Below are positions 6,180-64,000 of a stretch of DNA of 64,000 bases, piece after piece (position 1 is the stretch's first letter; every line of letters starts with the position of its first letter). Location: the IMG/VR virus record IMGVR_UViG_3300028864_000016, positions 62,001 to 126,000 of that record; one strand, given 5' to 3'. A model generated the notes under the pieces. That model did no database searches. It was given only the letters and a program-made list of their open reading frames with translations, and had not been told where the DNA came from. A program made the position numbers and the translations under genes.

Positions 6180-7142
6180 ATGGAACAAAATAAAATTATT
6201 AAACTATTTACAGATGAAAAAGTAGAAGTAAAGGAACGAGAATTCACAAAAATTTTAGGTGGTTTTTCAGAAACAAGTCCCGTAATTACTGATAAACAAA
6301 TCGGAGATTTACTTGGATATGCAAAAGGTGCTAGGCAGGTTAGAGATCAAGTTAATAGTAATTTACAACATTTTACGAGAGATGATATTATTGATTTACA
6401 ACGTGGAGATGGGAGCGACACGTTTGCTGAAGTATTGAAAACACTAGGCTACGCAAAACAATCTATAACACAAGCTAAAAATATTTATGTGTTTTCTGAA
6501 GCAGGTTTTCTATTATATTTAAAGTTTGCCGAAGGTGATAAATCAGTAGAATTATACAAAGATTTTATTGAAGACTACTTTAAAACAAAAGCTGAGAATA
6601 TAGTAATGGAAAAGACATTAGAAGAAACTAAGCAAGCACTAATTGATGAAAGAAAATACATATTAGGTAGTGTTATTTTTGAAACTGATACAACTAAGAA
6701 AATGCAACTGTTACAAAGAGATAAAAAATTAGAAGAACAAATAAATGAAATAGAAAAGACTTTAGCTAAGGAAGAATTAATGGAACAATTAAAAGATAAA
6801 TTAGCTATTGCATATGCATTTGAACAATCTAATAAAGAATATAGTATTGGTACATTTGCTAGATTCTTAAATATTAAGAATTTCGGACAAAATAAATTAT
6901 TTGAATGGATGAGAGATAGCGAAATATTAATGAAAAACAATGAGCCATATCAAAGATTTATGAATAATTTTCATGTTATACCAGTTAAGAAAAATAAATT
7001 TACTGGTAGTAAAACTTTGATTAAAGCAAATGGAGTATCATACATAGTAAAGAGATTAATAAAAGATGGTAAAATTCAATCTAAAACTTACGAGGAAATT
7101 ATAAATGATATCAATGAAAATTTACAATCAGAAGCTAGTTAG
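6180..7142 (+). CDS. Phage antirepressor, C-terminal KilA-C/ANT domain
   Basis: C-terminal SIGTFARFLNIKNFGQNKLFEWMRDSEILMKNNEPYQRFM...KTLIKANGVSYI matches the ANT/KilA-C pattern; central coiled coil. Confidence 0.8.
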   Translation: MEQNKIIKLFTDEKVEVKEREFTKILGGFSETSPVITDKQIGDLLGYAKGARQVRDQVNSNLQHFTRDDIIDLQRGDGSDTFAEVLKTLGYAKQSITQAKNIYVFSEAGFLLYLKFAEGDKSVELYKDFIEDYFKTKAENIVMEKTLEETKQALIDERKYILGSVIFETDTTKKMQLLQRDKKLEEQINEIEKTLAKEELMEQLKDKLAIAYAFEQSNKEYSIGTFARFLNIKNFGQNKLFEWMRDSEILMKNNEPYQRFMNNFHVIPVKKNKFTGSKTLIKANGVSYIVKRLIKDGKIQSKTYEEIINDINENLQSEAS

Positions 7143-7214
7143 AAATAAATTAATATAAATAAAAATAAATGACTACATAGAAATGGACTAAATTAAATAT
7201 GAATAAAATTATTA

Positions 7215-7247
7215 GACTAGATACTAAAAAGGTATTCTAGTCTTTTT
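7215..7247 (+). terminator. Intrinsic terminator after antirepressor
   Basis: agactagatac...gtattctagtct hairpin followed by T-run. Confidence 0.7.
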
Positions 7248-7362
7248 ATGTAGAAATTACAAAGGAATTATTGACTCTATCCGAAAATAGTATTATTATA
7301 TATCTATAACCAATACATGAAAATAATGGTATGGAATAATAATACTAAGGGGATGAATAATT

Positions 7363-8097
7363 ATGAATAAAATCTTTAAAAAGTTTATTGTAATGGGAAT
7401 AATAGCTAGTTCGATAAGTATATTGCCTTTGACAGGAGCAAGTGCAGAGTGGAAACAAGACTCTAAAGGTTGGTGGAATACTGAAGGAAGTTCATGGTCA
7501 GTAGGTTGGAAGCAAATCGATTCTAAATGGTACTATTTTGGACAAGACGGTTATATGGCACATGATACTATTGTTGATGGATATAAAATTGATAATAATG
7601 GAGTATGGATTCAAAATAACACTGTAAACAATACAACAGAAACAAGTACAAATGTTTCGAATACGGCTAACAGTAATAATAGTTCTAATACTAATTTAAC
7701 TAATAACATAGATAATAGTACAAGTAGTAATTCAAGCGTTACATTAAATAATACTGGTGTGATTAATGCTAATACAACTAATAATGTTGCTGTTGATAAC
7801 ACTAGTAAAGAAGAAAAAGATTATTATAAAGAATTGAAGAAAAGTCAACAAAATGCACAAGATGATTTAAAAGCATATTATCAAAAACAATTAAATCAAG
7901 CTAAAGATGATTTAGCAGAAGCGAAAAAAGGATTAGATAATGTTAAAAGTCAATTAACTATTAAGACATTAGCAAAACAATCGGATGGAACTTGGCAATA
8001 TGTACCTTCTGTCGATACTTCAAAAGTTGCTCAATATGAAAAGAAAGTGAAAACTTATCAAGATTTAGTTGATTATTATGGGAAATTAGTTAAATAA
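7363..8097 (+). CDS. Secreted cell-wall-binding-repeat protein (moron) with a C-terminal tape-measure-like segment
   Basis: Signal peptide ending GASA; choline-binding-type repeats (GWKQIDSKWYYFGQDGYM); Asn/Thr linker; own promoter TTGACT-17-TATTAT (7271-7299) and terminators on both sides; C-terminus 29/63 identical to TMP segment 19693-19881. Confidence 0.85.
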   Translation: MNKIFKKFIVMGIIASSISILPLTGASAEWKQDSKGWWNTEGSSWSVGWKQIDSKWYYFGQDGYMAHDTIVDGYKIDNNGVWIQNNTVNNTTETSTNVSNTANSNNSSNTNLTNNIDNSTSSNSSVTLNNTGVINANTTNNVAVDNTSKEEKDYYKELKKSQQNAQDDLKAYYQKQLNQAKDDLAEAKKGLDNVKSQLTIKTLAKQSDGTWQYVPSVDTSKVAQYEKKVKTYQDLVDYYGKLVK

Positions 8098-8179
8098 TTA
8101 TAAACTTAAAAGACTTTAGAGATTATTAAATTAATTCTAAGGTCTTTTATTTTTATATAAGTAAAGTAAATAAAATGTG

Positions 8180-8207
8180 TTGACAGATAATAGTAAAAGA
8201 GTATAAT
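8180..8207 (+). promoter_or_regulatory. Sigma-A-type promoter driving a short non-coding transcript
   Basis: TTGACA (8180-8185)-16 nt-TATAAT (8202-8207) with no + strand ORF downstream. Confidence 0.75.
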
Positions 8208-8213
8208 AGAAAT

Positions 8214-8291
8214 TGTAAAGAAGTTAAAACTAAATTATATAAATGTTTCATGCGATAAGATGCTTAGTTCCAGTAAGTATCTTATTTTTTT
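8214..8291 (+). ncRNA. Candidate type I antitoxin sRNA (locus 1)
   Basis: Consensus promoter, terminator ataagatgctta...taagtatcttat plus T-run; carries a 12-nt copy (8242-8253) of the toxin start region (8523-8534). Confidence 0.55.
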
Positions 8292-8409
8292 ATATGTAAA
8301 AAGAACTTTCTATATTGCTTCATTACCACCTCACATGAGTTCCAGTCACGCTTTTTAACTCCACAATATTTACTCGTTCTTATTTCCAACTATTAAATTT
8401 TTCTATTTG

Positions 8410-8532
8410 TTATTTAATTATTGGGATATGTATATTTAAAACTGATGCTATCATATTAAAAAGTCCACCTAAGAAGATAAGTACTGATTTCAACAATTCG
8501 TTATCTATAGTAAATTTCTTGCAATGTTTCAT
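8410..8532 (-). CDS. Candidate type I toxin, 40 aa MKHCKKFTIDNELLKSVLIFLGGLFNMIASVLNIHIPIIK
   Basis: Translated by hand (below ORF-track cutoff); GGGAGGGAGG RBS inside a tgccatc/gatggca hairpin; single hydrophobic helix; convergent with sRNA. Confidence 0.65.
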   Translation of the reverse strand: MKHCKKFTIDNELLKSVLIFLGGLFNMIASVLNIHIPIIK

Positions 8533-8663
8533 GCCATCGCCTCCCTCCCAATTAGGAATATTCGAGATGGCAATATAATTATAACATTGTATGGAAGTAA
8601 TTACAATTTAATGGAAAATATATTTGGTTGTAAATAAGTATACAATTGTGATATAATGGAGAT

Positions 8664-11682: not shown

Positions 11683-13521
11683 ATGAGCAATGAAGAATAT
11701 CATAGAATTATAGAAAAATTCAAAGATGAAAATAAGGAATTAATTGAAAGTGGTAAATATAAAAAAATGTTTACTGAGAATTTACCAAAATGGAATAATG
11801 GGTGTTATATAGGTAAAATAAATTGGGAAAAAAGTATTGGATATAAAGTATTTTTTATATACGATAATTTAATAGGATGGATAAATATTATTAAATATAT
11901 TAAAGGAAAACAGCCAAAAGTAAAAATTTTATACAAAAGTAAGGAAGCTATGTTATTAACAAGTTGCTTTAGTAATTGCATAATAGGTGAGATACTAGGA
12001 AAGAAAACAAAAGATTTTAAAATAGAAATCGGAACTCATTATAAAGATAGTCAAAGGGATATAACTATTACGGATATGAAGAGAGAACAAAATGAAAATG
12101 GTAAATGGAGTAAATTATATAAATACACTTGCAATGTTTGTGGGTTTGACTGTGGAGAACACTACTATCCTAGAGATAAAAAATACAAAGACGAATTATG
12201 GATAGGGGAAAGTAATTTATTAAAACATAAACAAGGTTGTTCGTGTTGTCATAGTGTTATAGTAGTAAATGGAATAAACGACGTTATAACAACCGATCCT
12301 TGGATGATACCATATATAGGTAAAGAATGTGCTAAGACTCATACGCATGGGAGTAATGACAAAGTTCAAGTAACTTGCACTGACTGCGGAAGAATTAGAG
12401 ATAAGAAAATAGAAATAAATAAGATATACACTTACAAATCTATCGGGTGTTCTTGTAGCGATTCAGTTAGTTACCCAAACAAAATCGCATATTCTTTACT
12501 AGAACAATTAAATCAAATATATAAGTTTGATTATTTAGAACATGAATATTCGCCTGAATGGATAGGATTAAAAAGATATGATAATTATTTTATTTATCAA
12601 AAAAAACAATATATACTTGAAATGGATGGCAAGTGGCATTCTAAAGACAATAAAATGAGTGGACAAACCAAATATAAATCCAAAGCTATAGATGATTATA
12701 AAGATGAACAAGCTAGATTACATGGTATTGAAGTTATTAGAATTGATTGTACGATAAGCGATTTAAATTTTATTAAACAAAACGTATTGAGTAACAATAA
12801 TATAAATAATTTATTTGATTTACGCAAAATAGATTGGCAAAAGTGTGAAGATTTTGCTTTATCTAACTTAGTCAAAGTGGTTTGTGAATACAAAAGAAAC
12901 AATTCTAATATAACTGCTTTTAAAATTGCAAAAATAATGAAATTATCTCAAGGAACAATAAGAACCTATCTCAAAAAAGGCAGAGAATTATATTGGTGTG
13001 ATTATGATGCTAAAGAAGAGCAAAGAAAGAGTATAGAAAAATATAGATTAGATAAAAGTAAAGAAGTAAAAATATTTAAAGACGGAGTTTATTTAGGGAA
13101 ATTTATTTCATGTTCAGATTTAGCTAGAAAGTCAGAAAAATTATTTGGTGTTAAATTAAAAGGTGGAGGAATTATTAGAGTTTGTAATGGCAAAGCAATA
13201 CATTATAAAGGATATAAATTTGAATATGCAAATATAACAGACAAGGAACATATAATTATAGAACAAAATAAGTCTATTTTAAAGACAAAACATGTTATAT
13301 GTTTAAATAATAGAATTATAACATATAATGTAACACAATGTGCTAAGAATAGTTTACAATTATTTGGGATTAAAATATCATATTCATCAATATATAATAT
13401 TTGTAATAATAAACAAAAAGAGATAAAAGGCTTTATGTTTAAATATATTCAAGATTTAACAGAAGAAGACTATATAACATATGATATAACTAATAAGCTA
13501 AAAGAATTAAAAGCTATATAA
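11683..13521 (+). CDS. Free-standing homing-endonuclease-like protein (Cys-rich zinc ribbons, PD-(D/E)xK/Vsr-like core, NUMOD1-like repeats)
   Basis: CxxC pairs; RYDNYF...YILEMDGKWH nuclease core; C-terminal IIRVCNGK...YKGYKFEY and IYNICNNK...IKGFMFKY repeats. Confidence 0.7.
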   Translation: MSNEEYHRIIEKFKDENKELIESGKYKKMFTENLPKWNNGCYIGKINWEKSIGYKVFFIYDNLIGWINIIKYIKGKQPKVKILYKSKEAMLLTSCFSNCIIGEILGKKTKDFKIEIGTHYKDSQRDITITDMKREQNENGKWSKLYKYTCNVCGFDCGEHYYPRDKKYKDELWIGESNLLKHKQGCSCCHSVIVVNGINDVITTDPWMIPYIGKECAKTHTHGSNDKVQVTCTDCGRIRDKKIEINKIYTYKSIGCSCSDSVSYPNKIAYSLLEQLNQIYKFDYLEHEYSPEWIGLKRYDNYFIYQKKQYILEMDGKWHSKDNKMSGQTKYKSKAIDDYKDEQARLHGIEVIRIDCTISDLNFIKQNVLSNNNINNLFDLRKIDWQKCEDFALSNLVKVVCEYKRNNSNITAFKIAKIMKLSQGTIRTYLKKGRELYWCDYDAKEEQRKSIEKYRLDKSKEVKIFKDGVYLGKFISCSDLARKSEKLFGVKLKGGGIIRVCNGKAIHYKGYKFEYANITDKEHIIIEQNKSILKTKHVICLNNRIITYNVTQCAKNSLQLFGIKISYSSIYNICNNKQKEIKGFMFKYIQDLTEEDYITYDITNKLKELKAI

Positions 13522-14861: not shown

Positions 14862-16947
14862 ATGGCTGGTGAATATAAAAGTTCGATACGTCTTGGCGTT
14901 CAGTTAGAAAGTGAAAAAGATGTTAGTGGAAGATTACAAACTTTAATAAATACTTTACAAAAAGAAAAAATTAATTTAGATATAAATATTGCAAATTCAG
15001 ATGTAGCTAAACAATTAGAAACTTTAACTACTTTAGCAAATAATTTTAAAAATAGTTTGGGTAGTAATGTTTCATTAGGTAACGTGAATGAGATTATTAA
15101 TCAAGTTACCTCTGCAATGGTTAGTATGAATGACCAAGTATTAAAGACATCAAGAGTTGATATAGGTGATGGAATAACCAAACAATTAAAACAAACTGCT
15201 GAAGGTATTGGTGTAGTTAAAAGAGAATTACAATTATTAGATAAAGATGATAATAACACTTCTAAAATAAAACCTACAACTACAACAGATTATAATAAAA
15301 TAAGACAATCAATAGAAGATATAACAAAAGCACAAAAGCAATTAAATGCCTTAGAATCTAATGGATTTTCTGATATTAATAAGATTGCTTACTTAAAAAC
15401 TATGCTAAGTAATCCAAATAGTATAGGTTCAGATAATGAATTAAAAGGTTATTTAAATCAAGTTAAAGAATTGTTAGCAACTGAATCAAAAGTTATTGAA
15501 TATTCAAATAAATTAAATTCTCTGAAGTCTAATATGACTAATTTAACCGATGAGAAATATTCAAATGTTTTAAATACACAATCATTTGAACAAATAATTA
15601 ATGAGATAAATAATGCTCAAAATGGATTGAAAAACTTCGATGGTATAAATTTAAACGGCTTAAAACAACAATTTGATGAGTTGAGTGGAACTGTTTCTAA
15701 GTTTAGCACTGAAACTATAAGTTCTCAAAAAGCAGAACAAGATAATATAAAACAAAGAGAAAAATTAGAATCAGATAGGATATCTCAAATTCAGAAAGAA
15801 ATAGATTTAAGCAATAAATTAGTTGAAAATGAACAAAAGAGACAAGTAAAAGATGATTCAGCTAATTTAAAGCAATTAGAACAAGAACAGACTCTGTTAC
15901 AAAAACAAGCAGAAGCATACCAACATATAGACGCATTAAAATCAAACGGAATAGTAAATGAATCAGATATATCTAAACTTGAACAAATGGTTAAGAATTC
16001 TAAATCACTTCAAGATGTACGTAATGCAATTAATTCTATTATGAATACATCAATGATGAAAGAATCGTCTATTGTTACTATGTCTAAACAATTAGATGAT
16101 GCACAAATTAAATTGGATAAAATGAAGCAGAGTTTCGGAAATAAGTTGCCACAAGGCTTCGTAGAATCTACACAATCTGAAATTAATAAATTAAAAGAAG
16201 ATTTAACTAAAGTAGATAGTATGGGATTCAATGGTCTTAAAAATAGCTTGAATCAAGTTAATACTAATATGAAAGTAACCACTAACGAAACTCAACAATT
16301 AGTTAATTCTTTGAAAGAAACTAACAATGGTTCATTCTTTAGTGGAATCTCTAATTTTTTAGGTAAAGTTGGTATTTTTTATGGTGTTCAACAGGTAGTT
16401 CAAGAGATTAGTCAGCAGTTTAAAGATGCTAGTGAATATACTCAATCTTTAGATAAAAATGTGACAAATATTGAAATGATCACCTCGAAGAGTAAGGAAG
16501 AAGTTATTGGATTAACTAATCAATTTAAGGAATTAGGTGCTCAATTACATATAACTAATCAAGAAATGTTAGCAGGGTCAGAAGAACTTTTAAGGGCAGG
16601 TTTTGACAATAACACTACCAATAAAATGCTGGAAGCAAGTTCGATGGCTAGTAAGATTTCAGGTCAAACTACACAGGCAACAACAGAACAATTAATTGCA
16701 ATTAAGAATTCTTTCAATATGACTGGCGACCAAATGCAACATGTAATTGATGTTATTTCTAAATTAGATAATTCTAGTGCTACAAGTTTCGCTGAAATTT
16801 CTTCAGCAATTATGAGAACTAGTTTTAGTGCCCAACAAGCCGGAACAAGCTTTGATACGCTTTCAAGCTATGTAACTACAGTAAGTGAGAAGACTCGTAG
16901 ATCGGCAGAGACTATTGGAGAAGCATTTAAGAGTATTTATAGCAGAT
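14862..16947 (+). CDS. Tape measure protein, exon 1
   Basis: Long coiled coil, then TP901-type TMP core (LGAQLHITNQEMLAGSEELLRAG...TIGEAFKSIYSR); ends at a U typical of a group I 5-prime splice site. Confidence 0.85.
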
Positions 16948-17260
16948 TAATGATAAAAATAGTCTGCCTATACAGTAATGTATAGATAAAAACTAGGTGA
17001 ACCTGTAAATATAGGGTGTGCTATTAAATATAGTGCTAACGATGAAAGTCTAAGTTATTTAATAAAATAAATAATATGATAATATCGTGCCAAGTCTAAG
17101 TAATTAGAAAGGTGTAACGACTAAATTGGATTAATAATCCTAAGAGGTTTGAGGTGAAATTCCTTATTCCGTAGTGCCTAGCCCTCATGTGAGGTGAAGA
17201 GATAGTCTACTCCCACTTTTTAATAAGTGTTAAAGTATAGTGAAAACTAGGGTAAAAAGG
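16948..17260 (+). mobile_element. Group I self-splicing intron (313 nt, no ORF) in the tape measure gene
   Basis: P1: exon GCAGAU pairs with intron GUCUGC with terminal U-G; P2 ctatacagtaatgtatag; R element aacgacta; S element aagagatagtct; terminal G17260; splicing restores the frame SRYYNIKLGNIDEDG. Confidence 0.85.
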
Positions 17261-20200
17261 ATTATAACATAAAGTTAGGGAATATTGATGAGGATGGTAA
17301 AAACATAAATGACGTTGAGAAGGCAATGAATAACGTCGGTATTGCAATTCGTTCATCTAAGGGTGAGTTTAAGGATTTCGATGAGGTTTTAAATGAATTT
17401 GTGAATAAATATAAAAAAGGAACAATGAGTCAAGTTGATTTCTTAGCTGGAATAAACACGCTCGGTGGTTCTAGACAGAAAGAGACGATACTTAGTTTAG
17501 TCGAGAATTTCGACCAAGTTAAAAAACATCAAGATGATTTAACAAAAGCTACTGGTTCAGCTAAACAAATGTATGATGTTTATTCTCAATCTTTAGAAGC
17601 AAGAATATCTGATCTAAAAAGAGCATTTGAAGGATTGTATGAAAAAATAATGTCTTCGGATTCTTTAAAATGGCTAGTTTCAGAAGCTACTAATTTAATA
17701 ACTGCACTATCAAATCTAGATGGAAAATCAATAACATATATAGCAACAATTGGAACATTAAGTTTAGCATTGTCAAAATTAGTTAAAATTAACAAAGAAT
17801 TGATGCTATTAACTACAGAAGGTGGAATAGTAACTGGATTAACTAAATTTATTGGATTAGCTTCGGGAATGGTATCTTTAGAGAATGGGGCTACCGGTGT
17901 AGCAACTGCATTTGGTGTATTAGGAACTAGTATTAAAGGAGCTACTGCATCCGCTATGGGTTTTATAGCTACGCCAATTGGTTTAGCTATAACTTCAATC
18001 ACTGCTGTTATAGGAGTTGCAATTTATGGATTTGTTTCGTATCAACAACATCAAGCTGAGTTAACAGAACAATCTAAGTCTCTTAAATCAGCACTCGATG
18101 GCGTTAATAATTCTCTAAAGGGTGGAGACACTACTAAGGCACAAGAAGAAGCTAACAAAATGAAATCAGCACAAGAAAAGTTACAACAATATATTGAGTT
18201 AAGAAAGAAAGCACAAGATACTGATTCTAAATCATTAAATCCTACTGCAAGCGGTACAAACCAAACATCTGTAATAGAAGGGTTTAATCAAAAAATTAAA
18301 GAACAAATAAAAGTACTTACCGATGCTGGTTATACAGTTGAAGAAACTACTGGGAAAATAAAAGAATTTACTGACGCACAAGATAAAATATATAATACTA
18401 AAATAATAAATAGTATTAAAGAACAAACAAAATCACAATTAGAACATAGAGAAAATTTAGACAAAGTACAAGCTGAATATAATAATTATATTTCAACAGT
18501 TAAAAATTTGTATACAGAATATCAAAACTTATCTGCACAAGAAAATTTGTCGGCGGAACAAAAAACTAAACTACAGGGTACAGTAGAACAATTACAAGGT
18601 AAAATGAGTGGATTGAATGTCTCTATTGATGAAAATGGAAAAGTATTAATTTCAAATTCACCATTAATAGAAGCAAATATTCAGAAATTAATATCAGAAG
18701 GACTTACAGTTGATAATTTATCAGCTATTCGTATAACAGATTCTAAGGTAAATTCTCAATGGCAAGTAGGGAATTCTCAAGTTACATATAATGAAATAAC
18801 AAATAGAATTGAAATGTATAAAGCTGAGATAAAAGCGATACAATCTGTTATTCAAGCAAGAATGGCTGGGGCATCTGATTATTCAACGATGAGTATAGGT
18901 AAAGCACAAAGTCTAGAAGCTGGTTCACCAGAATTTGATAAACTAAAAGAAGAAACTGACCAATTACATGCGTATGAGAAAGCGAAAAAAGAAGCAGATG
19001 ATTTATATGCTGGGATAGGAAGTGTTGCATATTCTGCTCCTAGTGGAGGTGGTGTACAAACACCATCTAATGGAGATTATATGCCTTCTGGTGGGGATTC
19101 TAGCGAGAAAAAAAAGGCAGAAAAAGAACTTGAAGATTCAGAAAAGAAAATGTTATCTAATATCACAGATGCTTATAAACAAGCAAAAGATACTATATCG
19201 AATAATATTGAAGAAATAGATGCAAAGATAACTGGATTAGGTGATATAGATGATTCTAATTTTACTCAAAAAGTTTCACTTGTAAATGATAAAATAGGTG
19301 AACAAAAGCAAATAGTTGAAAAAGCACAAGAACAGTTAGACTCTTTAAAAAATACAACGGTAACAACGGCAGATGCACAAAAGGAACTTGAATCTGCAAC
19401 TTTATCTGCATCGAAGGAATTACGACAAGAAAGTTTAGAAGTAGCAAAATTACAATCAGAAATTGAAAAAACTGATATTGATGAACTAAAGAAAATGTAT
19501 GAAGATCAACAAAAGATTGAAACAGAAACTTTAGAAGCTAATCAAAAAGCACAAACAGATAAAATAGAATCTATTAAGAAAGCACAAGAAGATGCACATA
19601 ATGAGATAATGGATGACTATGAGGATGAATTAGATGCTTTAGATAAAAAATCTAAGAAATTAGATGAAGATAATGACAAGATAGATAGAGCTAATGAATT
19701 AGAAAAAGAGAAAAATGATTTAACAGAAAAACAAAAAGAGTTAAATAATGTTAAAAGTCAATTAACTAATCAAGTATATCAAAAGCAAGCAGATGGAACA
19801 TGGCAATTTGAGTATGTTGCAGATACTCAAAAGATTGCAGAAAAACAAAAAGAAGTTACAGAAGCACAAAAAACTCTTGATGATACAAATAGAAAAAATT
19901 CACTAGATGATGCTAAAAAAGAAATAGAAGATAAAAAAAGTGTTATTGAAGCTGATAAAAAAGCAGAAGATGAAGCATATACAAAGAAGAAAGCATATTT
20001 AGATGAGTATTCCTCTTATTTGAAAGAATCACAAGAGAGAGACACGAAACGTCTCGAGAATCATTATTCAGATATTGAAAAAATGGCAAAAGATACATTA
20101 AAGAAATTAGAAGAAGAGCATAACAATGATTGGAATGCTATTTCAGATTCAATTTCAGCTACACTAACTAGAACTAAAAAAGCATTAGAAGACTTAACTA

Positions 20201-21180
20201 CATTAAGAGCTAATTTTACAACTTCGGAAGCAAATGATGCTATTAATAGTGGGGATGTATCAGGATATTTAACAAAAAATAAAGATAAAATGAATTTAAA
20301 AGCAAGTGTAGATGAAAGTGATATAGATTCTCATTTAAATTCTATTAGTGACAAAGCAGATAAGGCTAACAATTCAGTTACTATATTGAATAAAACTTAT
20401 GACGAATTATTATCAAAGAAAAGCATTAATATAACCGAAGCTGATATTAATAATAAGAAAGTTCAAGTTCAAAAGCAAGTAGATATAGATAATGAAGGTT
20501 TAACAACTACTTTGAATAATTTAAAAGCTATTAATCTAGCAATTGAAACAGAAATAGACTCTCATTATTCAAAGGTAATTGACAAGCAAACTCAAGCACA
20601 ACAAAATGAGATGACTAGCTTACAAAACTTTGCAAAAGAATATACTATTTATTATAATAAATTCCTAGAATTAGTACAAACAGTTAATGACTTTAGATTT
20701 AATAATATTGTAGTGAATGTACAAGCATCTGTAGACAATGTATTACAAGGATTAGAAGTTATAGCAAAGGCTTATGAAAAATATGCTAAGGCATATAATA
20801 AAATGCACCCAGACGATACTATTTCTTCTAGTATTGATATATCAGATGTACAAAGTGCGAATACATCCTATAAAAAATCCGTAAGTGATTATCAAGCTAA
20901 TGTATTGTCATCATATTCTGCCGAAGCTTTTGAAAAATATGCAAGTCAAATTGGAAGTGGAATAGGAGATAGTTTATTGAGTAAGTTAAATAATTATAGT
21001 AGTTCTACTAGTAATATTAATAACACAAATAACGCTTCCACAACTAATAATAGTAATAAATCTACAACATCTAATACAACTAATGTAAATATAAATCAAC
21101 TTGATGTAAATACAAAGGACGCACAAAATTTATTAAATCAATTGTTAACAATAGTTAAAAATAAAACAAATTTGAGTTAG
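17261..21180 (+). CDS. Tape measure protein, exon 2 (spliced product 2001 aa)
   Basis: Frame is open upstream of ATG 17326 back to 17261; hydrophobic membrane segments, then long coiled coil; 2086+3920=6006 nt. Confidence 0.85.
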
Positions 21181-52986: not shown

Positions 52987-53063
52987 TGAGTTGGTGGAGT
53001 GATTTATGGTCAAAAGCAAAAAAACCTAAGAAGCCTAAAGAAGATGATGATAATAATAACTAG
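52986..53063 (+). CDS. 25-aa micropeptide MSWWSDLWSKAKKPKKPKEDDDNNN
   Basis: TAATG stop/start overlap with the upstream gene and GGAGGTG RBS; its own stop TAG overlaps the next RBS. Confidence 0.6.
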   Translation: MSWWSDLWSKAKKPKKPKEDDDNNN

Positions 53064-53077
53064 GAGGTGTATTAATT

Positions 53078-53383
53078 ATGAGTGAAAACGAAAGAATGGC
53101 AATTATTGAGACAACATTAGATACAATTAAAGGTGATATACATTTATTATATAAAAAAACCGATGAAATAAATTCATTAAATACTGCTATAGCACTTCTT
53201 ACTGCAAGTGTAAATGAATTAAAAATAACAGTTAATGCTTTAAATGGGAAACTGGATCTTGCTACAAATGAGCCAATAAAAGAAAAAGCAAAGAATTGGA
53301 ATAATATAATTAATACAGGAATAAGTACAGTTGTCGGTGGACTAATTGCATATATATTAATGAAACTAGGATTAAGCAAATAA
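53078..53383 (+). CDS. XhlA/haemolysin-like or holin-like small protein (coiled coil plus C-terminal TM)
   Basis: ERMAIIETTLDTIKGDI coiled coil; C-terminal ISTVVGGLIAYILMKLGL. Confidence 0.55.
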   Translation: MSENERMAIIETTLDTIKGDIHLLYKKTDEINSLNTAIALLTASVNELKITVNALNGKLDLATNEPIKEKAKNWNNIINTGISTVVGGLIAYILMKLGLSK

Positions 53384-53385
53384 AA

Positions 53386-53462
53386 AGAAGTCAACTTTTA
53401 CAAGCTAACTTCTAACAAAATACCATCAAGAGAAATACCAATTACAAATTAAAATTTCTCTT
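53386..53462 (-). ncRNA. Candidate convergent sRNA
   Basis: - strand TTGACA (53496-53491)-16-TATAAT (53474-53469); hairpin aagagaaa/tttctctt, then a terminator shared with the end of 53078..53383. Confidence 0.45.
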
Positions 53463-53502
53463 AATAATATTATACAACATTCACCATAAATGTCAATGGA
53501 TT

Positions 53503-53561
53503 AAATGAGGTACTATACAATAATTTCTAATTAATTTTAGAATTTGTATAGTACCTCATTT
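53503..53561. repeat. Long inverted repeat (perfect 18-bp arms) at the + / - strand convergence
   Basis: aaatgaggtactatacaa...ttgtatagtacctcattt with inner ttctaa/ttagaa pairing. Confidence 0.8.
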
Positions 53562-53656
53562 TTTCTGATTTTCTGAAAAGCAAATGGTTAATCACTAATA
53601 TTAAAACTTTCTACCTTATTAATATCTACAAATATATGGATATTATACATGGTTAT

Positions 53657-53902
53657 TTAAATTTTGAATAATATCCATTTACAGTCTTCAATCATGTACT
53701 TTATTTCGCAAATCTTTTGTAATCCATCAATATTAACGTTACAAGTAAATACCCAAGACCTGTTTCCGCACAACCTTATTACCTTTACTATATTTATAAC
53801 CTTAAATCCATTATCTTCTTCAATTTTAAATCTAATAGGTTTAATCTTTCCAATCTTGTCAAAGTGGCAAATAACCTCAATATTTTGGGATAATACCTTC
53901 AC
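53657..53902 (-). CDS. Small clostridial SOS-associated protein
   Basis: GTG start with AAGGAAG RBS; VKVLSQNIEVICHFDKIGKIKPIRFKI...CEIKYMIEDCKWILFKI; LexA-type box upstream. Confidence 0.55.
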   Translation of the reverse strand: MKVLSQNIEVICHFDKIGKIKPIRFKIEEDNGFKVINIVKVIRLCGNRSWVFTCNVNIDGLQKICEIKYMIEDCKWILFKI

Positions 53903-53942
53903 AAAATGCACTTCCTTTTATATTATATATTAATATTATACA

Positions 53943-53954
53943 GAACATTTGTTT
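53943..53954. promoter_or_regulatory. LexA/DinR-type SOS box
   Basis: GAAC-ATTT-GTTT fits the Firmicute GAAC-N4-GTTY consensus; lies between the -35 and TATAAT of the - strand promoter. Confidence 0.6.
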
Positions 53955-53990
53955 GTTTGGGAAGTGCAAATTAGTGTTAAATTTATCCTT

Positions 53991-54689
53991 TTATAAAGAC
54001 TTTAATCTCTCATAATCATTTTCTATTCCACAGAAAATTAATTCTTTAGAATAAGGTAATGTTGTACACCACTTACAGAATACTTCTTGCCATTCATATT
54101 TTAATCTATGATGTTTTCTTTGTTGTATAATATTACTTATAGTAGCATAATTTGTATTAACAGTTCTTTTATTCTGATAAGATTCTGGTAGTATTCTTTT
54201 AGCTGAAGATAATACTTCGTCTTTTTGTCCTTGAGTATCACATTCTTCAAAAAATATATCTCTTAAAATATTTAAATCTTCTATTATATTTGACAAATGT
54301 CCATTTTCAAATGCATCAGCAGAATGACATTCAAACATATCTAATGTAATCTCAGTATTTTTATCAAATAGCTTATGCATTGTTGAAGTTGAATTTGCAG
54401 ATGTTCCTATTTTATAAGTATCAAATTCTGACCACCAATACCTAGGTGCTGTTATATCACACCAAACTTGTATTTGTCTAAAGAATTTGCAATGTTCTGT
54501 ACCAGCTTTAATTAATGTTTGTGCTAGTTTTAAATCTTTGTCACCCATAATAAATTCCTCTATATTAATGTTTGGGCTATTTAATAGTAACCCTTTGTAA
54601 CTATCACTTAAATTCCAACTATTTTTTGGATTTCTCATTCCTCTAAAACTTGCTTTAAATCCATAAACCTCTGTATTTTCTATTTTCAT
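53991..54689 (-). CDS. ThyX-like (FAD-dependent thymidylate synthase-like) phage protein
   Basis: LIKAGTEHCKFFRQIQVWCDITAPRYWWSEFDTYK...STSTMH...AKRILPESY...NYATISNIIQQRKHH parallels ThyX architecture. Confidence 0.55.
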   Translation of the reverse strand: MKIENTEVYGFKASFRGMRNPKNSWNLSDSYKGLLLNSPNINIEEFIMGDKDLKLAQTLIKAGTEHCKFFRQIQVWCDITAPRYWWSEFDTYKIGTSANSTSTMHKLFDKNTEITLDMFECHSADAFENGHLSNIIEDLNILRDIFFEECDTQGQKDEVLSSAKRILPESYQNKRTVNTNYATISNIIQQRKHHRLKYEWQEVFCKWCTTLPYSKELIFCGIENDYERLKSL

Positions 54690-62174: not shown

Positions 62175-62666
62175 TTATTTTGTTCCAGAACTTCCAAATC
62201 CCTTTTCATTTCTTTCACTTTCATCTAGTTCATCTACAACAATTACTTCATCAGTTGATATATAACCTATAACCATTTGTGCTAACTTTGTTTTAGCAGG
62301 GATGTCAACTTCATAATCTTCTTGATTATAGACTATGATTCCTATATCTCCTCTATAATTGGAATCTAAAGTTCCTAATTGTACTCTTAAATATGGTGAG
62401 CATTCTGTATAAGTAGGTGGCATTTCAGTAGGAGGATACATAGTACCAAAACATCCACTACATCCTTTTAATGTAATCCCACTTCTAGGTCTTATAGTTG
62501 CTTCTTGATTAGTTTCTAATTGTACTGATATTCCTGTAGGTATTACAATTGTTTGATTGGGTTGTATTGTCGCTTCATTTAAGGTAAATAAATCAAAACC
62601 AGCATCGCCTACTTTACCTTTGCATGGAATTATTGCATTTTCATTTAATTTTTTAAATTTTATCAT
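62175..62666 (-). CDS. dut: Trimeric dUTPase
   Basis: AGFDL, RPRSG, GTLDSNYRGDIG, LAQMVI, RNEKGFGSSG (motifs 1-5). Confidence 0.92.
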   Translation of the reverse strand: MIKFKKLNENAIIPCKGKVGDAGFDLFTLNEATIQPNQTIVIPTGISVQLETNQEATIRPRSGITLKGCSGCFGTMYPPTEMPPTYTECSPYLRVQLGTLDSNYRGDIGIIVYNQEDYEVDIPAKTKLAQMVIGYISTDEVIVVDELDESERNEKGFGSSGTK

Positions 62667-62763
62667 TATATATCTCTCCTTCAAATTCTTATTATTTTAT
62701 ATTTTTAATTTATTTCGTTTTAGCAACTGCACTTGTGAATAAGTGTGTCGGTCAAGTTGATAA

Positions 62764-63297: not shown

Positions 63298-63939
63298 CTA
63301 TTTCTTGATATAATATAGCAATAATCCACCTAATACATTAGATATTGTTACTATCACTAATGATATAATTACATTTATAATATTTAAATTCATTCCACTA
63401 CAAAATCCTAAAGTATAATAAGTCATATCTGCAATACTGTGATTAAATCCACATATTACAAACACAGTGATAAAGAATCCACTTATTAAATGATTACTAT
63501 ACATTTTGTAATTAGCTACTGCACAACATACAAGAAAATTACATACAATACCACCAATGATTAATTGTATTGGATTAAGTGCTAATTTAGTATTTACTAT
63601 TTGTTCTACATTTGGATGTAATACTTGAAATAATGCTATAGTCGTTATTACTGATCCTATTAAATTTCCAATCCAAGTTTTAGTTAATGTTTTAATATAT
63701 TCTTTAATTGATATATTACTTTTTGAAAAATATTGTTGTGTATATGTATCTGTTTTTAAACTTAATACTTGTCCAGTAAATAAATCGAATCCAAAAATCA
63801 TAACTAAACTTAAACCTAAATAGAACATAATACTTGCTATAAATGGACTATTTGTCTTTTGTAATGTTATTAAGTAAGCAAATGTACCTAATGATATAGA
63901 AACACCTGCCATTATAGAATTTTTATACTTACTTATCAT
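63298..63939 (-). CDS. Formate/nitrite transporter (FNT) family channel
   Basis: SIMAGVSISLG, GFDLFTG, TWIGNLIGS, GIVCNFLVCCAV, FVICGFNHSIADM, VTISNVLGG. Confidence 0.85.
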   Translation of the reverse strand: MISKYKNSIMAGVSISLGTFAYLITLQKTNSPFIASIMFYLGLSLVMIFGFDLFTGQVLSLKTDTYTQQYFSKSNISIKEYIKTLTKTWIGNLIGSVITTIALFQVLHPNVEQIVNTKLALNPIQLIIGGIVCNFLVCCAVANYKMYSNHLISGFFITVFVICGFNHSIADMTYYTLGFCSGMNLNIINVIISLVIVTISNVLGGLLLYYIKK

Positions 63940-64000
63940 ATATAACTACTTCACCTTTCTTTAATGATTTTTGAACATCAATTATTCTTTGATTATAACT

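What the first reader, a model, noticed from the sequence alone, without database searches (positions are those of the whole stretch)
63298..63939. Phage-encoded formate/nitrite-family channel with non-canonical pore motifs
Seen: an intact 213-aa six-helix FNT core in the phage - strand gene block, lacking the usual N-terminal cytoplasmic helix, with DLFTGQ and GFNHSIAD in place of the typical ELFTGN and GFEHSxAN. Known: FNT channels pass formate, nitrite or hydrosulfide in anaerobes. Inference: an auxiliary metabolic gene altering acid efflux in a fermenting host, or a constitutively open channel affecting membrane potential.
Basis: partly seen in the sequence, partly recalled or inferred. 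Interest (0 to 1): 0.6.

Follow-up and report, generated by a model that had tools for sequence, protein, structure and literature searches.

The report
Phage formate channel beside anaerobic RNR
A 218-kb phage of anaerobic, probably clostridial, bacteria carries a stripped-down formate/nitrite-family channel gene fused into its anaerobic ribonucleotide reductase operon, which suggests the phage secures its own supply of formate, the reductant that this reductase type uses to make DNA building blocks.

Summary
The ORF is real: 213 aa on the minus strand, a confident FNT-family member (Pfam 119 bits; AF2 pLDDT 95.5) with no N-terminal cytoplasmic helix. It is not a recent host fragment. It belongs to a clade of about 35 short (191-220 aa) FNTs under purifying selection (dN/dS 0.07-0.3). 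The clade separates from canonical cellular FNTs (support 100/98) and was found in only 3 of about 820 cellular genomes searched, all in one Clostridium genus.

The gene overlaps the stop of nrdG by 11 nt and follows nrdD. This nrdD-nrdG-FNT order recurs in all nine independent phage contexts, even where NrdD is only about 28% identical. All linked NrdDs carry the Met-x-Cys finger loop of the formate-dependent (T4/E. coli) type, and NrdD is the only RNR found in the phage.

All pore residues needed for formate translocation in FocA are invariant. Asn166 and Asp171 are unusual, but they vary within the clade and their positions tolerate exchange in FocA.

Best reading: an ungated formate conduit that feeds the phage's class III RNR. 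This is a new variant of a known kind.

The parts
63298..63939 (-). Short FNT-family channel gene (213 aa), six-TM core without an N-terminal helix
   Evidence: ORF; Pfam PF01226, 119 bits; AF2 pLDDT 95.5; Foldseek TM 0.80-0.85 to HSC, FocA, NirC and PfFNT
63929..64000 (-). 3' end of nrdG (anaerobic RNR activase, 165 aa). The rest of nrdG and nrdD (709 aa, with ATP-cone) lie beyond the window end, at genome 125929-126426 and 126469-128598 (L002:5930-6427 and 6470-8599)
   Evidence: PF13353 E 1e-40; PF13597 E 1e-179, plus Gly_radical and ATP-cone
63929..63939 (-). 11-nt overlap of the FNT start codon with the last codons and stop of nrdG (tat-ATG-A..taa)
   Evidence: sequence read. The same overlap or tight spacing occurs in L004, L005 and L011
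63951..63955 (-). GGTGA Shine-Dalgarno-like motif 11 nt upstream of the FNT ATG, inside nrdG
   Evidence: a sequence match only, not tested
63775..63777 (-). Codon of Thr55 (FocA T91, omega loop), invariant in 35/35 clade members
63439..63441 (-). Codon of His167 (FocA H209, central pore His), invariant in 35/35
   Evidence: FocA H209N is efflux-only (PMC12559229)
63586..63588 (-). Codon of Lys118 (FocA K156, vestibule Lys essential for translocation), invariant in 35/35
63718..63759 (-). Residues 61-74: insert of about 12 aa, specific to the window's subclade, predicted as a beta-hairpin in the TM2b-TM3 loop (aligned to the flexible cytoplasmic region of FocA)
   Evidence: alignment, DSSP of the model, FocA alignment, PMC12559229
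62175..62684 (-). dUTPase gene, downstream member of the same minus-strand nucleotide-metabolism block
   Evidence: PF00692 E 1e-25. dUTPase is also downstream of the FNT in L003, L004, L008, L009 and L011
62764..63218 (-). Two small ORFs (59 and 72 aa) between the FNT and dUTPase genes, no family match

Best explanation
The gene encodes a minimal FNT anion/weak-acid channel: pore core only, with no N-terminal gating helix. It is transcribed, and probably translationally coupled, with the phage's nrdD-nrdG operon. Its most likely job is to let formate (as formic acid or formate plus H+) into the infected anaerobic cell, or to equilibrate it across the membrane, so that the phage's only ribonucleotide reductase has its stoichiometric reductant while a 218-kb genome is replicated many times. 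That reductase is a T4/E. coli-type class III enzyme, which oxidises one formate to CO2 per dNTP made. Because the helix through which PflB gates FocA is missing, the channel would work independently of the host's formate-producing enzyme, with NrdD acting as the sink that pulls formate inward.

Shown: family membership, fold, conservation of all translocation residues, operon position, conservation of the linkage, NrdD subtype, purifying selection.

Inferred: that formate is the substrate, that the direction is uptake, and that the channel is ungated.
For: (1) Context. The FNT start overlaps the nrdG stop by 11 nt, and nrdD lies directly upstream.

(2) The nrdD/nrdG-FNT linkage holds in all nine independent phage-like contexts recovered. 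These include loci with an intein-bearing NrdD, a split NrdD and an NrdD-NrdG fusion, and two loci with one or two ORFs inserted in between (L007, L008). The genes outside the triad differ between loci.

(3) Identities are discordant. L013 has NrdD 79%, NrdG 68% and FNT 45% identical to the window's. L005 has FNT 84%, NrdD about 28% and NrdG 36%. The linkage therefore survived replacement of one partner.

(4) All seven distinct linked NrdDs have the PMG-C-R (Met-x-Cys) finger loop of the formate-using NrdDc/NrdD1 type, and none has the SCCR motif of the thioredoxin type (criteria from PMC4493059 and PMC4390871).

(5) No class I/II RNR and no PFL were found in the 218-kb record.

(6) The pore is intact. 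The FFHA central constriction and the LLTV cytoplasmic slit are conserved in 35/35 and 34-35/35 clade members. T91, H209, K156, N172 and N262 equivalents are invariant. In FocA, K156 and N172 are essential, and His209 is required for uptake, since H209N is efflux-only (PMC9380403, PMC12559229).

(7) Position 167 is Ser or Gly, uncharged as in the formate channels FocA and FdhC. It is basic or acidic in NirC and HSC (PMC5525234).

(8) dN/dS is 0.07-0.3.
Against: Sequence and fold cannot assign a substrate. HSC scores slightly better than FocA (56 vs 32 bits), and all NCBIfam equivalog cut-offs are missed. FNTs are promiscuous in vitro.

Most phage NrdDs may be of the Met-x-Cys type anyway, so point (4) is a weak test. 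The related phage contigs share ancestry, so the nine contexts are not fully independent.

The three cellular clade members are not next to nrdDG. Distant FNT-like genes in Phass-1 and in a 192-kb IMG/VR phage are not adjacent to their NrdD genes.
Confidence: 0.55

Rival explanations
1. Formate or weak-acid efflux, or pH homeostasis: the channel vents formate or other fermentation acids from the infected cell to keep the cytoplasm viable during the latent period.
For: FocA's first role in fermenting E. coli is formate efflux (PMC8914244 abstract). The pore is intact. The host is probably a fermenting Clostridium.
Against: Exporting formate would deprive the adjacent, co-translated formate-dependent NrdD of its reductant. 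Efflux does not explain the strict nrdDG linkage across divergent phages. Efflux does not need the central His (H209N FocA still effluxes), yet His is invariant in 35/35. Hosts already carry one to three canonical FNTs.
Confidence: 0.13
2. A channel for another small anion or acid: nitrite, hydrosulfide, bicarbonate (product side of NrdD), acetate or lactate. On this reading the nrdDG neighbourhood is a historical accident of a nucleotide-metabolism gene cluster.
For: The best sequence match among solved structures is the C. difficile hydrosulfide channel. LciA, a bicarbonate FNT, matches structurally as well as FocA does. A cyanophage FNT has been read as a nitrite importer (PMC8115048). Position 93 (Gln/Lys) and position 254 are unlike any characterised subfamily.
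Against: The charged residue at position 167 that typifies NirC and HSC is absent in 34/35 members. No nitrite or sulfite reductase genes lie nearby. CO2 needs no channel. The linkage to nrdDG is conserved despite NrdD replacement.
Confidence: 0.12
3. Formate import for the one-carbon pool (10-formyl-THF via host Fhs, feeding purines and dTMP) rather than for NrdD itself.
For: The gene sits in a nucleotide-metabolism block with dUTPase, and in L007 with dCMP deaminase. Clostridia commonly use formate-THF ligase (general knowledge).
Against: The phage record has no FTHFS gene and only a sub-threshold ThyX-like hit. The tightest and most conserved neighbour is nrdG/nrdD, with start/stop overlap.
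Confidence: 0.08
4. Membrane-perturbing role: a constitutively open pore that dissipates membrane potential (lysis timing, superinfection exclusion or host shut-off).
For: The gating N-terminal helix is lost.
Against: Both hydrophobic constrictions that seal FNT pores are strictly conserved. The gene is in the early nucleotide-metabolism block, not near lysis genes. Conservation of the translocation residues K156, N172, T91 and H209 is not expected for a mere leak.
Confidence: 0.05
5. A non-functional or unexpressed passenger gene.
For: No expression data could be obtained.
Against: Intact ORFs occur in about 35 sequences diverged to 45-50% identity, with dN/dS 0.07-0.3 and invariant catalytic residues. 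The gene is operonic and overlaps nrdG.
Confidence: 0.03

Closest known systems
FocA (E. coli/Salmonella formate channel; FNT family, TC 1.A.16)
   Same: Same fold (TM about 0.80-0.85). It shares the FFHA central constriction, the LLTV slit, F90, T91, H209, K156, N172 and N262, and an Asp before LFT. The gene lies next to, and is co-transcribed with, a glycyl-radical enzyme and its activase (focA-pflB-pflA; here nrdD-nrdG-FNT).
   Different: About 25% identity, and NCBIfam FocA cut-offs are missed by far. It has no N-terminal helix (the PflB-binding gate) and lacks FocA's long loop E and C-terminal tail. Its partner enzyme consumes formate instead of producing it, and the channel gene is last in the operon, not first. 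Gln57 replaces Ser/Thr93, Gly/Ser129 replaces Leu167, Asn166 replaces Glu208 and Asp171 replaces Asn213.
FdhC (formate channels of Firmicutes and methanogens)
   Same: Ser at position 167 in 22/35 clade members, and a non-Glu residue at 208 in half of them (FdhC has Gln). Firmicute distribution.
   Different: FdhC has V/L/I at position 90 and Asn at 93, where the clade has Phe/Tyr and Gln/Lys. FdhC is full-length with an N-terminal region and is linked to formate dehydrogenase, not to an RNR.
HSC (C. difficile FNT3 hydrosulfide channel) and NirC
   Same: Best sequence hits among solved structures (56 and 49 bits). Clostridial origin.
   Different: A basic residue at position 167 is typical of HSC and NirC and is absent here. 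Those genes are linked to sulfite or nitrite reductase operons. They are full-length.
Cyanophage focA-nirA auxiliary metabolic genes (Gazitua et al. 2020, PMC8115048)
   Same: A phage-encoded FNT placed beside the enzyme that consumes its substrate, and under purifying selection.
   Different: That gene is a recent capture, 86% identical to the Prochlorococcus host gene. It is full-length with a regulatory C-terminus, is read as a nitrite importer, and belongs to an aerobic/dysoxic marine host. The present clade is deeply diverged from cellular FNTs, truncated, and linked to an RNR.
T4 NrdD/NrdG (phage class III RNR)
   Same: The neighbouring genes are clear homologues (E 1e-124). They share the PMGCRS finger loop, the bottom Cys and the glycyl-radical motif. 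T4 NrdD uses formate (PMC4390871).
   Different: The nrdDG genes of T4, and of the deposited phages searched, are not accompanied by an FNT. No clade member was found in 50,697 GenBank phage records.

Membership tests
FNT superfamily (Pfam PF01226 / TC 1.A.16) | Profile match above the curated threshold | tested here: met
   119.1 bits against a cut-off of 34.6
FNT superfamily (Pfam PF01226 / TC 1.A.16) | Six-TM aquaporin-like fold with broken TM2 (omega loop) and TM5 (S loop) | tested here: met
   AF2 model pLDDT 95.5 with helices 2-29, 32-49/54-60, 78-104, 123-147, 150-163/168-180 and 187-212. Foldseek probability 1.00 to all solved FNTs. Prediction only.
FNT superfamily (Pfam PF01226 / TC 1.A.16) | Central His (H209), omega-loop Thr (T91), and the two hydrophobic constrictions (F75/F202/A212; L79/L89/V175) | tested here: met
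   H167, T55, F39, F160, A170, L43, L53 and V137 are invariant or nearly so in 35 clade members
FNT superfamily (Pfam PF01226 / TC 1.A.16) | Homopentamer | not testable with these tools
Not attempted.
FNT superfamily (Pfam PF01226 / TC 1.A.16) | N-terminal cytoplasmic region of 25-32 aa (typical of all eight prokaryotic subfamilies, not strictly defining) | tested here: not met
   1-13 residues before TM1 in the clade against 29-58 in canonical FNTs (PMC5525234)
FocA subfamily | NCBIfam equivalog score (TIGR04060 cut-off 290; NF008069 cut-off 440) | tested here: not met
   66.7 and 33.2 bits
FocA subfamily | Ser/Thr at 93, Leu at 167, Glu at 208, long loop E; focA-pflB linkage | tested here: not met
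   Gln57, Gly129 (Ser in most of the clade), Asn166, short loop E. No PFL in the phage.
FocA subfamily | C-terminal I/L-Y-L-R/K cap after TM6 | tested here: inconclusive
   The window protein ends LYYIKK and clade members end in K/R-rich tails, but the automatic alignment does not place them in register
NirC / HSC subfamilies | Charged residue at position 167; equivalog score; linkage to nitrite or sulfite reductase | tested here: not met
   Ser/Gly in 34/35. NirC model 57 bits against a cut-off of 293. No such neighbours.
YfdC subfamilies | Gly at 172, non-Phe at 202, Glu at 92 | tested here: not met
   Asn134, Phe160 and Gly56. By contrast the distant viral L014/L015 proteins have Gly at 172.
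Formate-dependent class III RNR (NrdD1 / NrdDc), for the neighbouring gene | Met-x-Cys finger loop, single bottom Cys, C-terminal glycyl-radical motif, no SCCR | tested here: met
   PMGCRS at 388-393, HNCD at 174-177, RRTCGYIG. The same loop occurs in all seven linked NrdDs.
Formate-dependent class III RNR (NrdD1 / NrdDc), for the neighbouring gene | Turnover with formate as reductant | not testable with these tools
   Biochemical assay needed
Phage auxiliary metabolic gene | Encoded within a bona fide phage genome and maintained by selection | tested here: met
   Tail, tape-measure, neck and virion genes on the same contig. CheckV 88%. dN/dS 0.07-0.3.

The most novel reading that the evidence does not exclude
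The short FNT and the class III RNR form a dedicated reductant-delivery unit. The N-terminus-less pentamer would dock NrdD directly at the membrane, much as FocA docks PflB, perhaps through the subclade-specific cytoplasmic beta-hairpin. Imported formate would then be channelled straight into the radical enzyme's active site. That would be the first virus-encoded transporter-enzyme metabolon for dNTP synthesis, and a mirror image of FocA-PflB, with a consumer in place of a producer.
Probability: 0.12. Interest if true: 0.8.

Novelty: new variant of a known kind. Interest (0 to 1): 0.6.

Why it matters
Class III RNRs of the T4/E. coli type consume one formate per deoxynucleotide. Where that formate comes from during phage infection of anaerobes has not been considered a limiting step.

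A phage-specific channel hard-wired into nrdDG operons suggests that reductant supply can limit viral DNA synthesis in anoxic habitats. This would be a new class of auxiliary metabolic gene that links fermentation-product pools in gut, sediment or digester communities to phage productivity.

For FNT biology, the clade is a natural experiment. It is a minimal pore lacking the N-terminal gate that FocA needs. It also carries, naturally, an E208N plus N213D combination, the closest natural counterpart of the engineered E208Q/N213D double exchange that destabilises E. coli FocA. It could therefore help separate pore chemistry from partner-dependent gating.

All of this is directly testable with existing FocA reporter strains.

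Tried and rejected
- Megablast of 12 kb around the gene against 50,697 GenBank phages gave no match.
- A tblastn search of the protein against the same set found only distant FNTs at 33% identity or less. Several were host focA at prophage borders or bacterial contigs.
- NCBIfam could not assign a subfamily, and it does not resolve the canonical clostridial FNTs either.
- Foldseek against the PDB does not discriminate between FocA, NirC, HSC, PfFNT and LciA.
No expression or environment data were obtained and read laying was not used.
- The primary paper on formate as NrdD reductant (PMC41046) is not held. Secondary sources were cited instead.
- The promoter/terminator scan showed no enrichment over shuffles.
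- No tRNAs were found in the window, so there is no host clue from that source.
- Complex prediction was not run, because I do not claim that FNT and NrdD bind. The pentamer cannot be modelled (4-copy limit).
- The large representative search was not run. Word search, family scans, a GTDB pattern scan and tblastn of about 820 genomes already answered the question.
- Rejected, 'recent host capture': identity to canonical cellular FNTs is at most 41%, and the clade is separated at 100/98 support.
- Rejected, 'the short form is phage-exclusive': three Clostridium species carry chromosomal copies.

Full report
**Observation.** The window is bases 62001-126000 of a 218,173-bp IMG/VR virus record (25.8% GC, CheckV completeness 88%). 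The record is a tailed phage. The plus-strand block of the window encodes tape-measure, tail-fibre, baseplate, neck and virion proteins. The minus-strand block from about 54 kb onward encodes an NAD-dependent ligase and other DNA-metabolism genes. At 63298-63939 (-) there is an intact 213-aa ORF containing the strings DLFTGQ and GFNHSIAD. Only two more sense codons precede a stop, so the ORF cannot be extended. It matches Pfam Form_Nir_trans at 119 bits against a cut-off of 34.6, starting at profile position 24. It stays far below every NCBIfam equivalog threshold for FocA or NirC. With a 34-sequence alignment AlphaFold2 gives pLDDT 95.5 and pTM 0.90. The model is a complete six-TM FNT core with broken TM2 and TM5. 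It superposes on HSC, FocA, NirC, PfFNT and LciA at TM 0.80-0.85.

Directly upstream on the same strand, mostly beyond the window's end, lie nrdG (165 aa, PF13353 E 1e-40) and nrdD (709 aa: ATP-cone, NRDD E 1e-179, glycyl-radical domain). The FNT start codon lies inside the last codons of nrdG, an 11-nt overlap, with a GGTGA motif 11 nt upstream. Downstream lie two small ORFs and a dUTPase gene. No class I/II RNR, no PFL and no formate-THF ligase were found in the 218-kb record, so NrdD is the only RNR detected.

**The family.** A word-based search of 5.8 billion proteins returned about 38 relatives of 179-220 aa at 50-100% identity, all from metagenomes. Identity then drops abruptly to about 30% for 277-278-aa proteins. 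Pairwise dN/dS among phage copies is 0.07-0.3 where synonymous sites are not saturated. In a careful ML tree the 33 canonical FNTs (31 clostridial, plus E. coli FocA and NirC) separate from the short clade at 100/98 support. The short clade itself has 97/93.

Clade-level matches are rare in cellular genomes. They occurred in 1 of 301 Clostridiaceae genomes, 0 of 400 further genomes across the phylum, and 3 of 122 genomes in the genus of Clostridium sp. MSJ-8. The three cellular copies form one subclade (support 99) in a polytomy with the phage lineages. They lie in two different chromosomal, non-phage contexts without nrdDG. The direction of transfer is unresolved. The result does point to this Clostridium group as the likely host range, which fits the low GC content.

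No clade member exists among 50,697 deposited phage genomes. BFVD holds one distant 191-aa viral FNT at 20% identity.

**Linkage to nrdDG.** Every phage-like contig on which a clade member could be examined carries NrdD and/or NrdG immediately upstream:
- L003: NrdD with an intein, fused to NrdG.
- L004: NrdD split by an insert of about 230 nt.
- L005 and L006: NrdD with an intein.
- L009 and L010.
- L011.
- L013.
- L007: NrdD, then dCMP deaminase, then dUTPase, then FNT.
- L008: NrdG, then a 344-aa ORF, then FNT.

The genes outside the triad differ between loci. Identities are also discordant. L013 has NrdD 79% and NrdG 68% identical to the window's but FNT only 45%. L005 has FNT 84% identical but NrdD about 28% and NrdG 36%. 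The adjacency has therefore outlived the exchange of one partner, which argues for selection on the linkage rather than mere inheritance. In contrast, 0 of 29 canonical clostridial FNT loci have nrdD or nrdG within 1.5 kb.

**Why formate.** Class III RNRs of E. coli, phage T4 and L. lactis use formate as electron donor, through a Cys-Met pair in which the Met lies in the finger loop. Thioredoxin-dependent enzymes (N. bacilliformis, T. maritima; subclass NrdDh) carry an SCCR motif and occur in organisms lacking formate metabolism (PMC4493059, PMC4390871). The window's NrdD matches T4 NrdD at E 1e-124 and T. maritima NrdD only at E 8e-9. It has PMGCRS, the bottom Cys (HNCD) and RRTCGYIG. All seven distinct FNT-linked NrdDs have the PMG-C-R loop, in three cases interrupted exactly before the thiyl Cys by an intein or an intron-like insert. 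None has SCCR.

As an inference, one formate per dNTP means about 4.4e5 formate molecules per 218-kb genome copy. A burst of 50-100 therefore needs tens of millions, minus whatever is salvaged from host DNA.

**The pore.** Aligned to E. coli FocA, the equivalences are F39=F75, L43=L79, L53=L89, F54=F90, T55=T91, K118=K156, N134=N172, V137=V175, F160=F202, H167=H209, A170=A212 and N201=N262. All are invariant or nearly so in 35 clade members. This gives the FFHA central constriction and LLTV slit of the FocA, FdhC, NirC-beta/gamma and HSC subfamilies, not the YfdC or NirC-alpha patterns (PMC5525234).

In FocA, K156 and N172 are essential for translocation (PMC9380403). H209N converts the channel to efflux-only (PMC8914244, PMC12559229). 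An invariant His is therefore what an importer needs. Position 167 is Ser or Gly in 34/35 members. It is uncharged, as in the formate channels (Leu in FocA, Ser in FdhC), whereas NirC and HSC have a charged residue there.

Asp52 equals FocA D88 and is ordinary. Gln57 (position 93), Asn166 (E208) and Asp171 (N213) were absent from all 33 cellular sequences compared. They also vary within the clade: Q/K/E/M at position 93, E/N/L/S at 208 and D/N at 213. In FocA these are structural positions where E208Q and N213D are individually tolerated. The engineered double E208Q/N213D is unstable, so the natural N166/D171 pair must be compensated elsewhere in the protein.

**Missing N-terminus.** All eight prokaryotic FNT subfamilies have 25-32 residues before TM1, whereas the clade has 1-13. 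In FocA this helix cross-links to PflB, and deletions in it abolish bidirectional translocation (PMC12559229). The phage protein therefore cannot be gated in the FocA-PflB manner. The window's subclade instead has a 12-residue insert, predicted as a beta-hairpin (residues 61-74). It sits in the TM2b-TM3 loop, which aligns with the flexible cytoplasmic D98-L110 region of FocA. Its role is unknown.

**Prior art and novelty.** A phage FNT has been described once in the literature searched. It is a cyanophage focA beside nirA, 86% identical to the host gene, full-length, and read as a nitrite importer (PMC8115048). Searches that combined nitrite/formate transporter terms, phage and anaerobic RNR, or nrdD/nrdG with focA, returned nothing about an FNT-RNR linkage. 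I therefore rate this as a new variant of a known kind. It is a phage-centred, N-terminally minimal FNT subfamily embedded in class III RNR operons, with a specific and testable rationale.

**Limits.** Substrate, direction, gating, oligomeric state and expression are all inferred. The environment and host are not established. The related contigs share ancestry. The Met-x-Cys test may have low discriminating power if most phage NrdDs are of that type.

Noticed in passing
L003:2328-5951, L005:2261-5503, L004:3108-5492: In three FNT-linked NrdD genes a mobile element interrupts the gene at exactly the same site, between PMG and the thiyl-radical Cys. L003 and L005 carry inteins with LAGLIDADG/Hom_end domains. 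L004 carries a non-coding, relatively GC-rich insert of about 230 nt that looks like a group I intron. In L003 NrdD is also fused to NrdG in one 1207-aa ORF.
   Followed up: partly
L002:12088-12984 (genome 132087-132983, beyond the window); also L004:995-1873: The phage encodes a 298-aa protein with a methyl-accepting chemotaxis signalling domain (PF00015, E 1e-30). It is conserved (44% identity) upstream of nrdD in a related contig. This is an unusual phage gene.
   Followed up: no
L005:7399-8118 and L007:2415-2780: Relatives carry anti-defence genes next to the FNT: an Apyc1-like anti-Pycsar metallo-beta-lactamase-fold protein, and an Acb2/Tad1-hairpin protein.
   Followed up: no
L014:4920-5735 and L015:4920-5735 (IMG/VR contigs of 95 and 192 kb): A second, unrelated viral FNT lineage (271 aa) with YfdC-like pore residues (Gly at 172, Arg at 156, Met at 175) and also almost no N-terminal region. 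The complete 192-kb phage also encodes an NrdD, detected in several pieces at the contig ends and not adjacent to the FNT.
   Followed up: partly
L055:5968-6648 (Phage Phass-1, OQ749652.1): This 'code 15 clade' gut phage has a 226-aa FNT-like gene annotated as hypothetical (33% identity). Its NrdD lies 27 kb away.
   Followed up: partly
window 14862-16985 and 17326-21180 (+): Tape-measure homology is spread over two consecutive large ORFs (707 and 1284 aa) separated by about 340 nt.
   Followed up: no
window 11683-13521 (+): A 612-aa ORF in the structural block carries a homing-endonuclease-like segment (phrog_9084) inside a protein of unknown function.
   Followed up: no
window about 53000-54000: GC and AT skew change sign where gene orientation switches from the plus-strand structural block to the minus-strand DNA-metabolism block.
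   Followed up: no
L061:2415-2999 (Clostridium genome G777): The chromosomal short-FNT copy has a TAA just upstream of the conserved TM1 region, so its start may be displaced or the gene slightly truncated. The syntenic copy in G774 is intact (203 aa).
   Followed up: partly
window 62175-62684 (-): The dUTPase matches its Pfam model in two stretches, with an inserted segment of about 30 residues (Cys/Pro/Thr-rich) between them.
   Followed up: no
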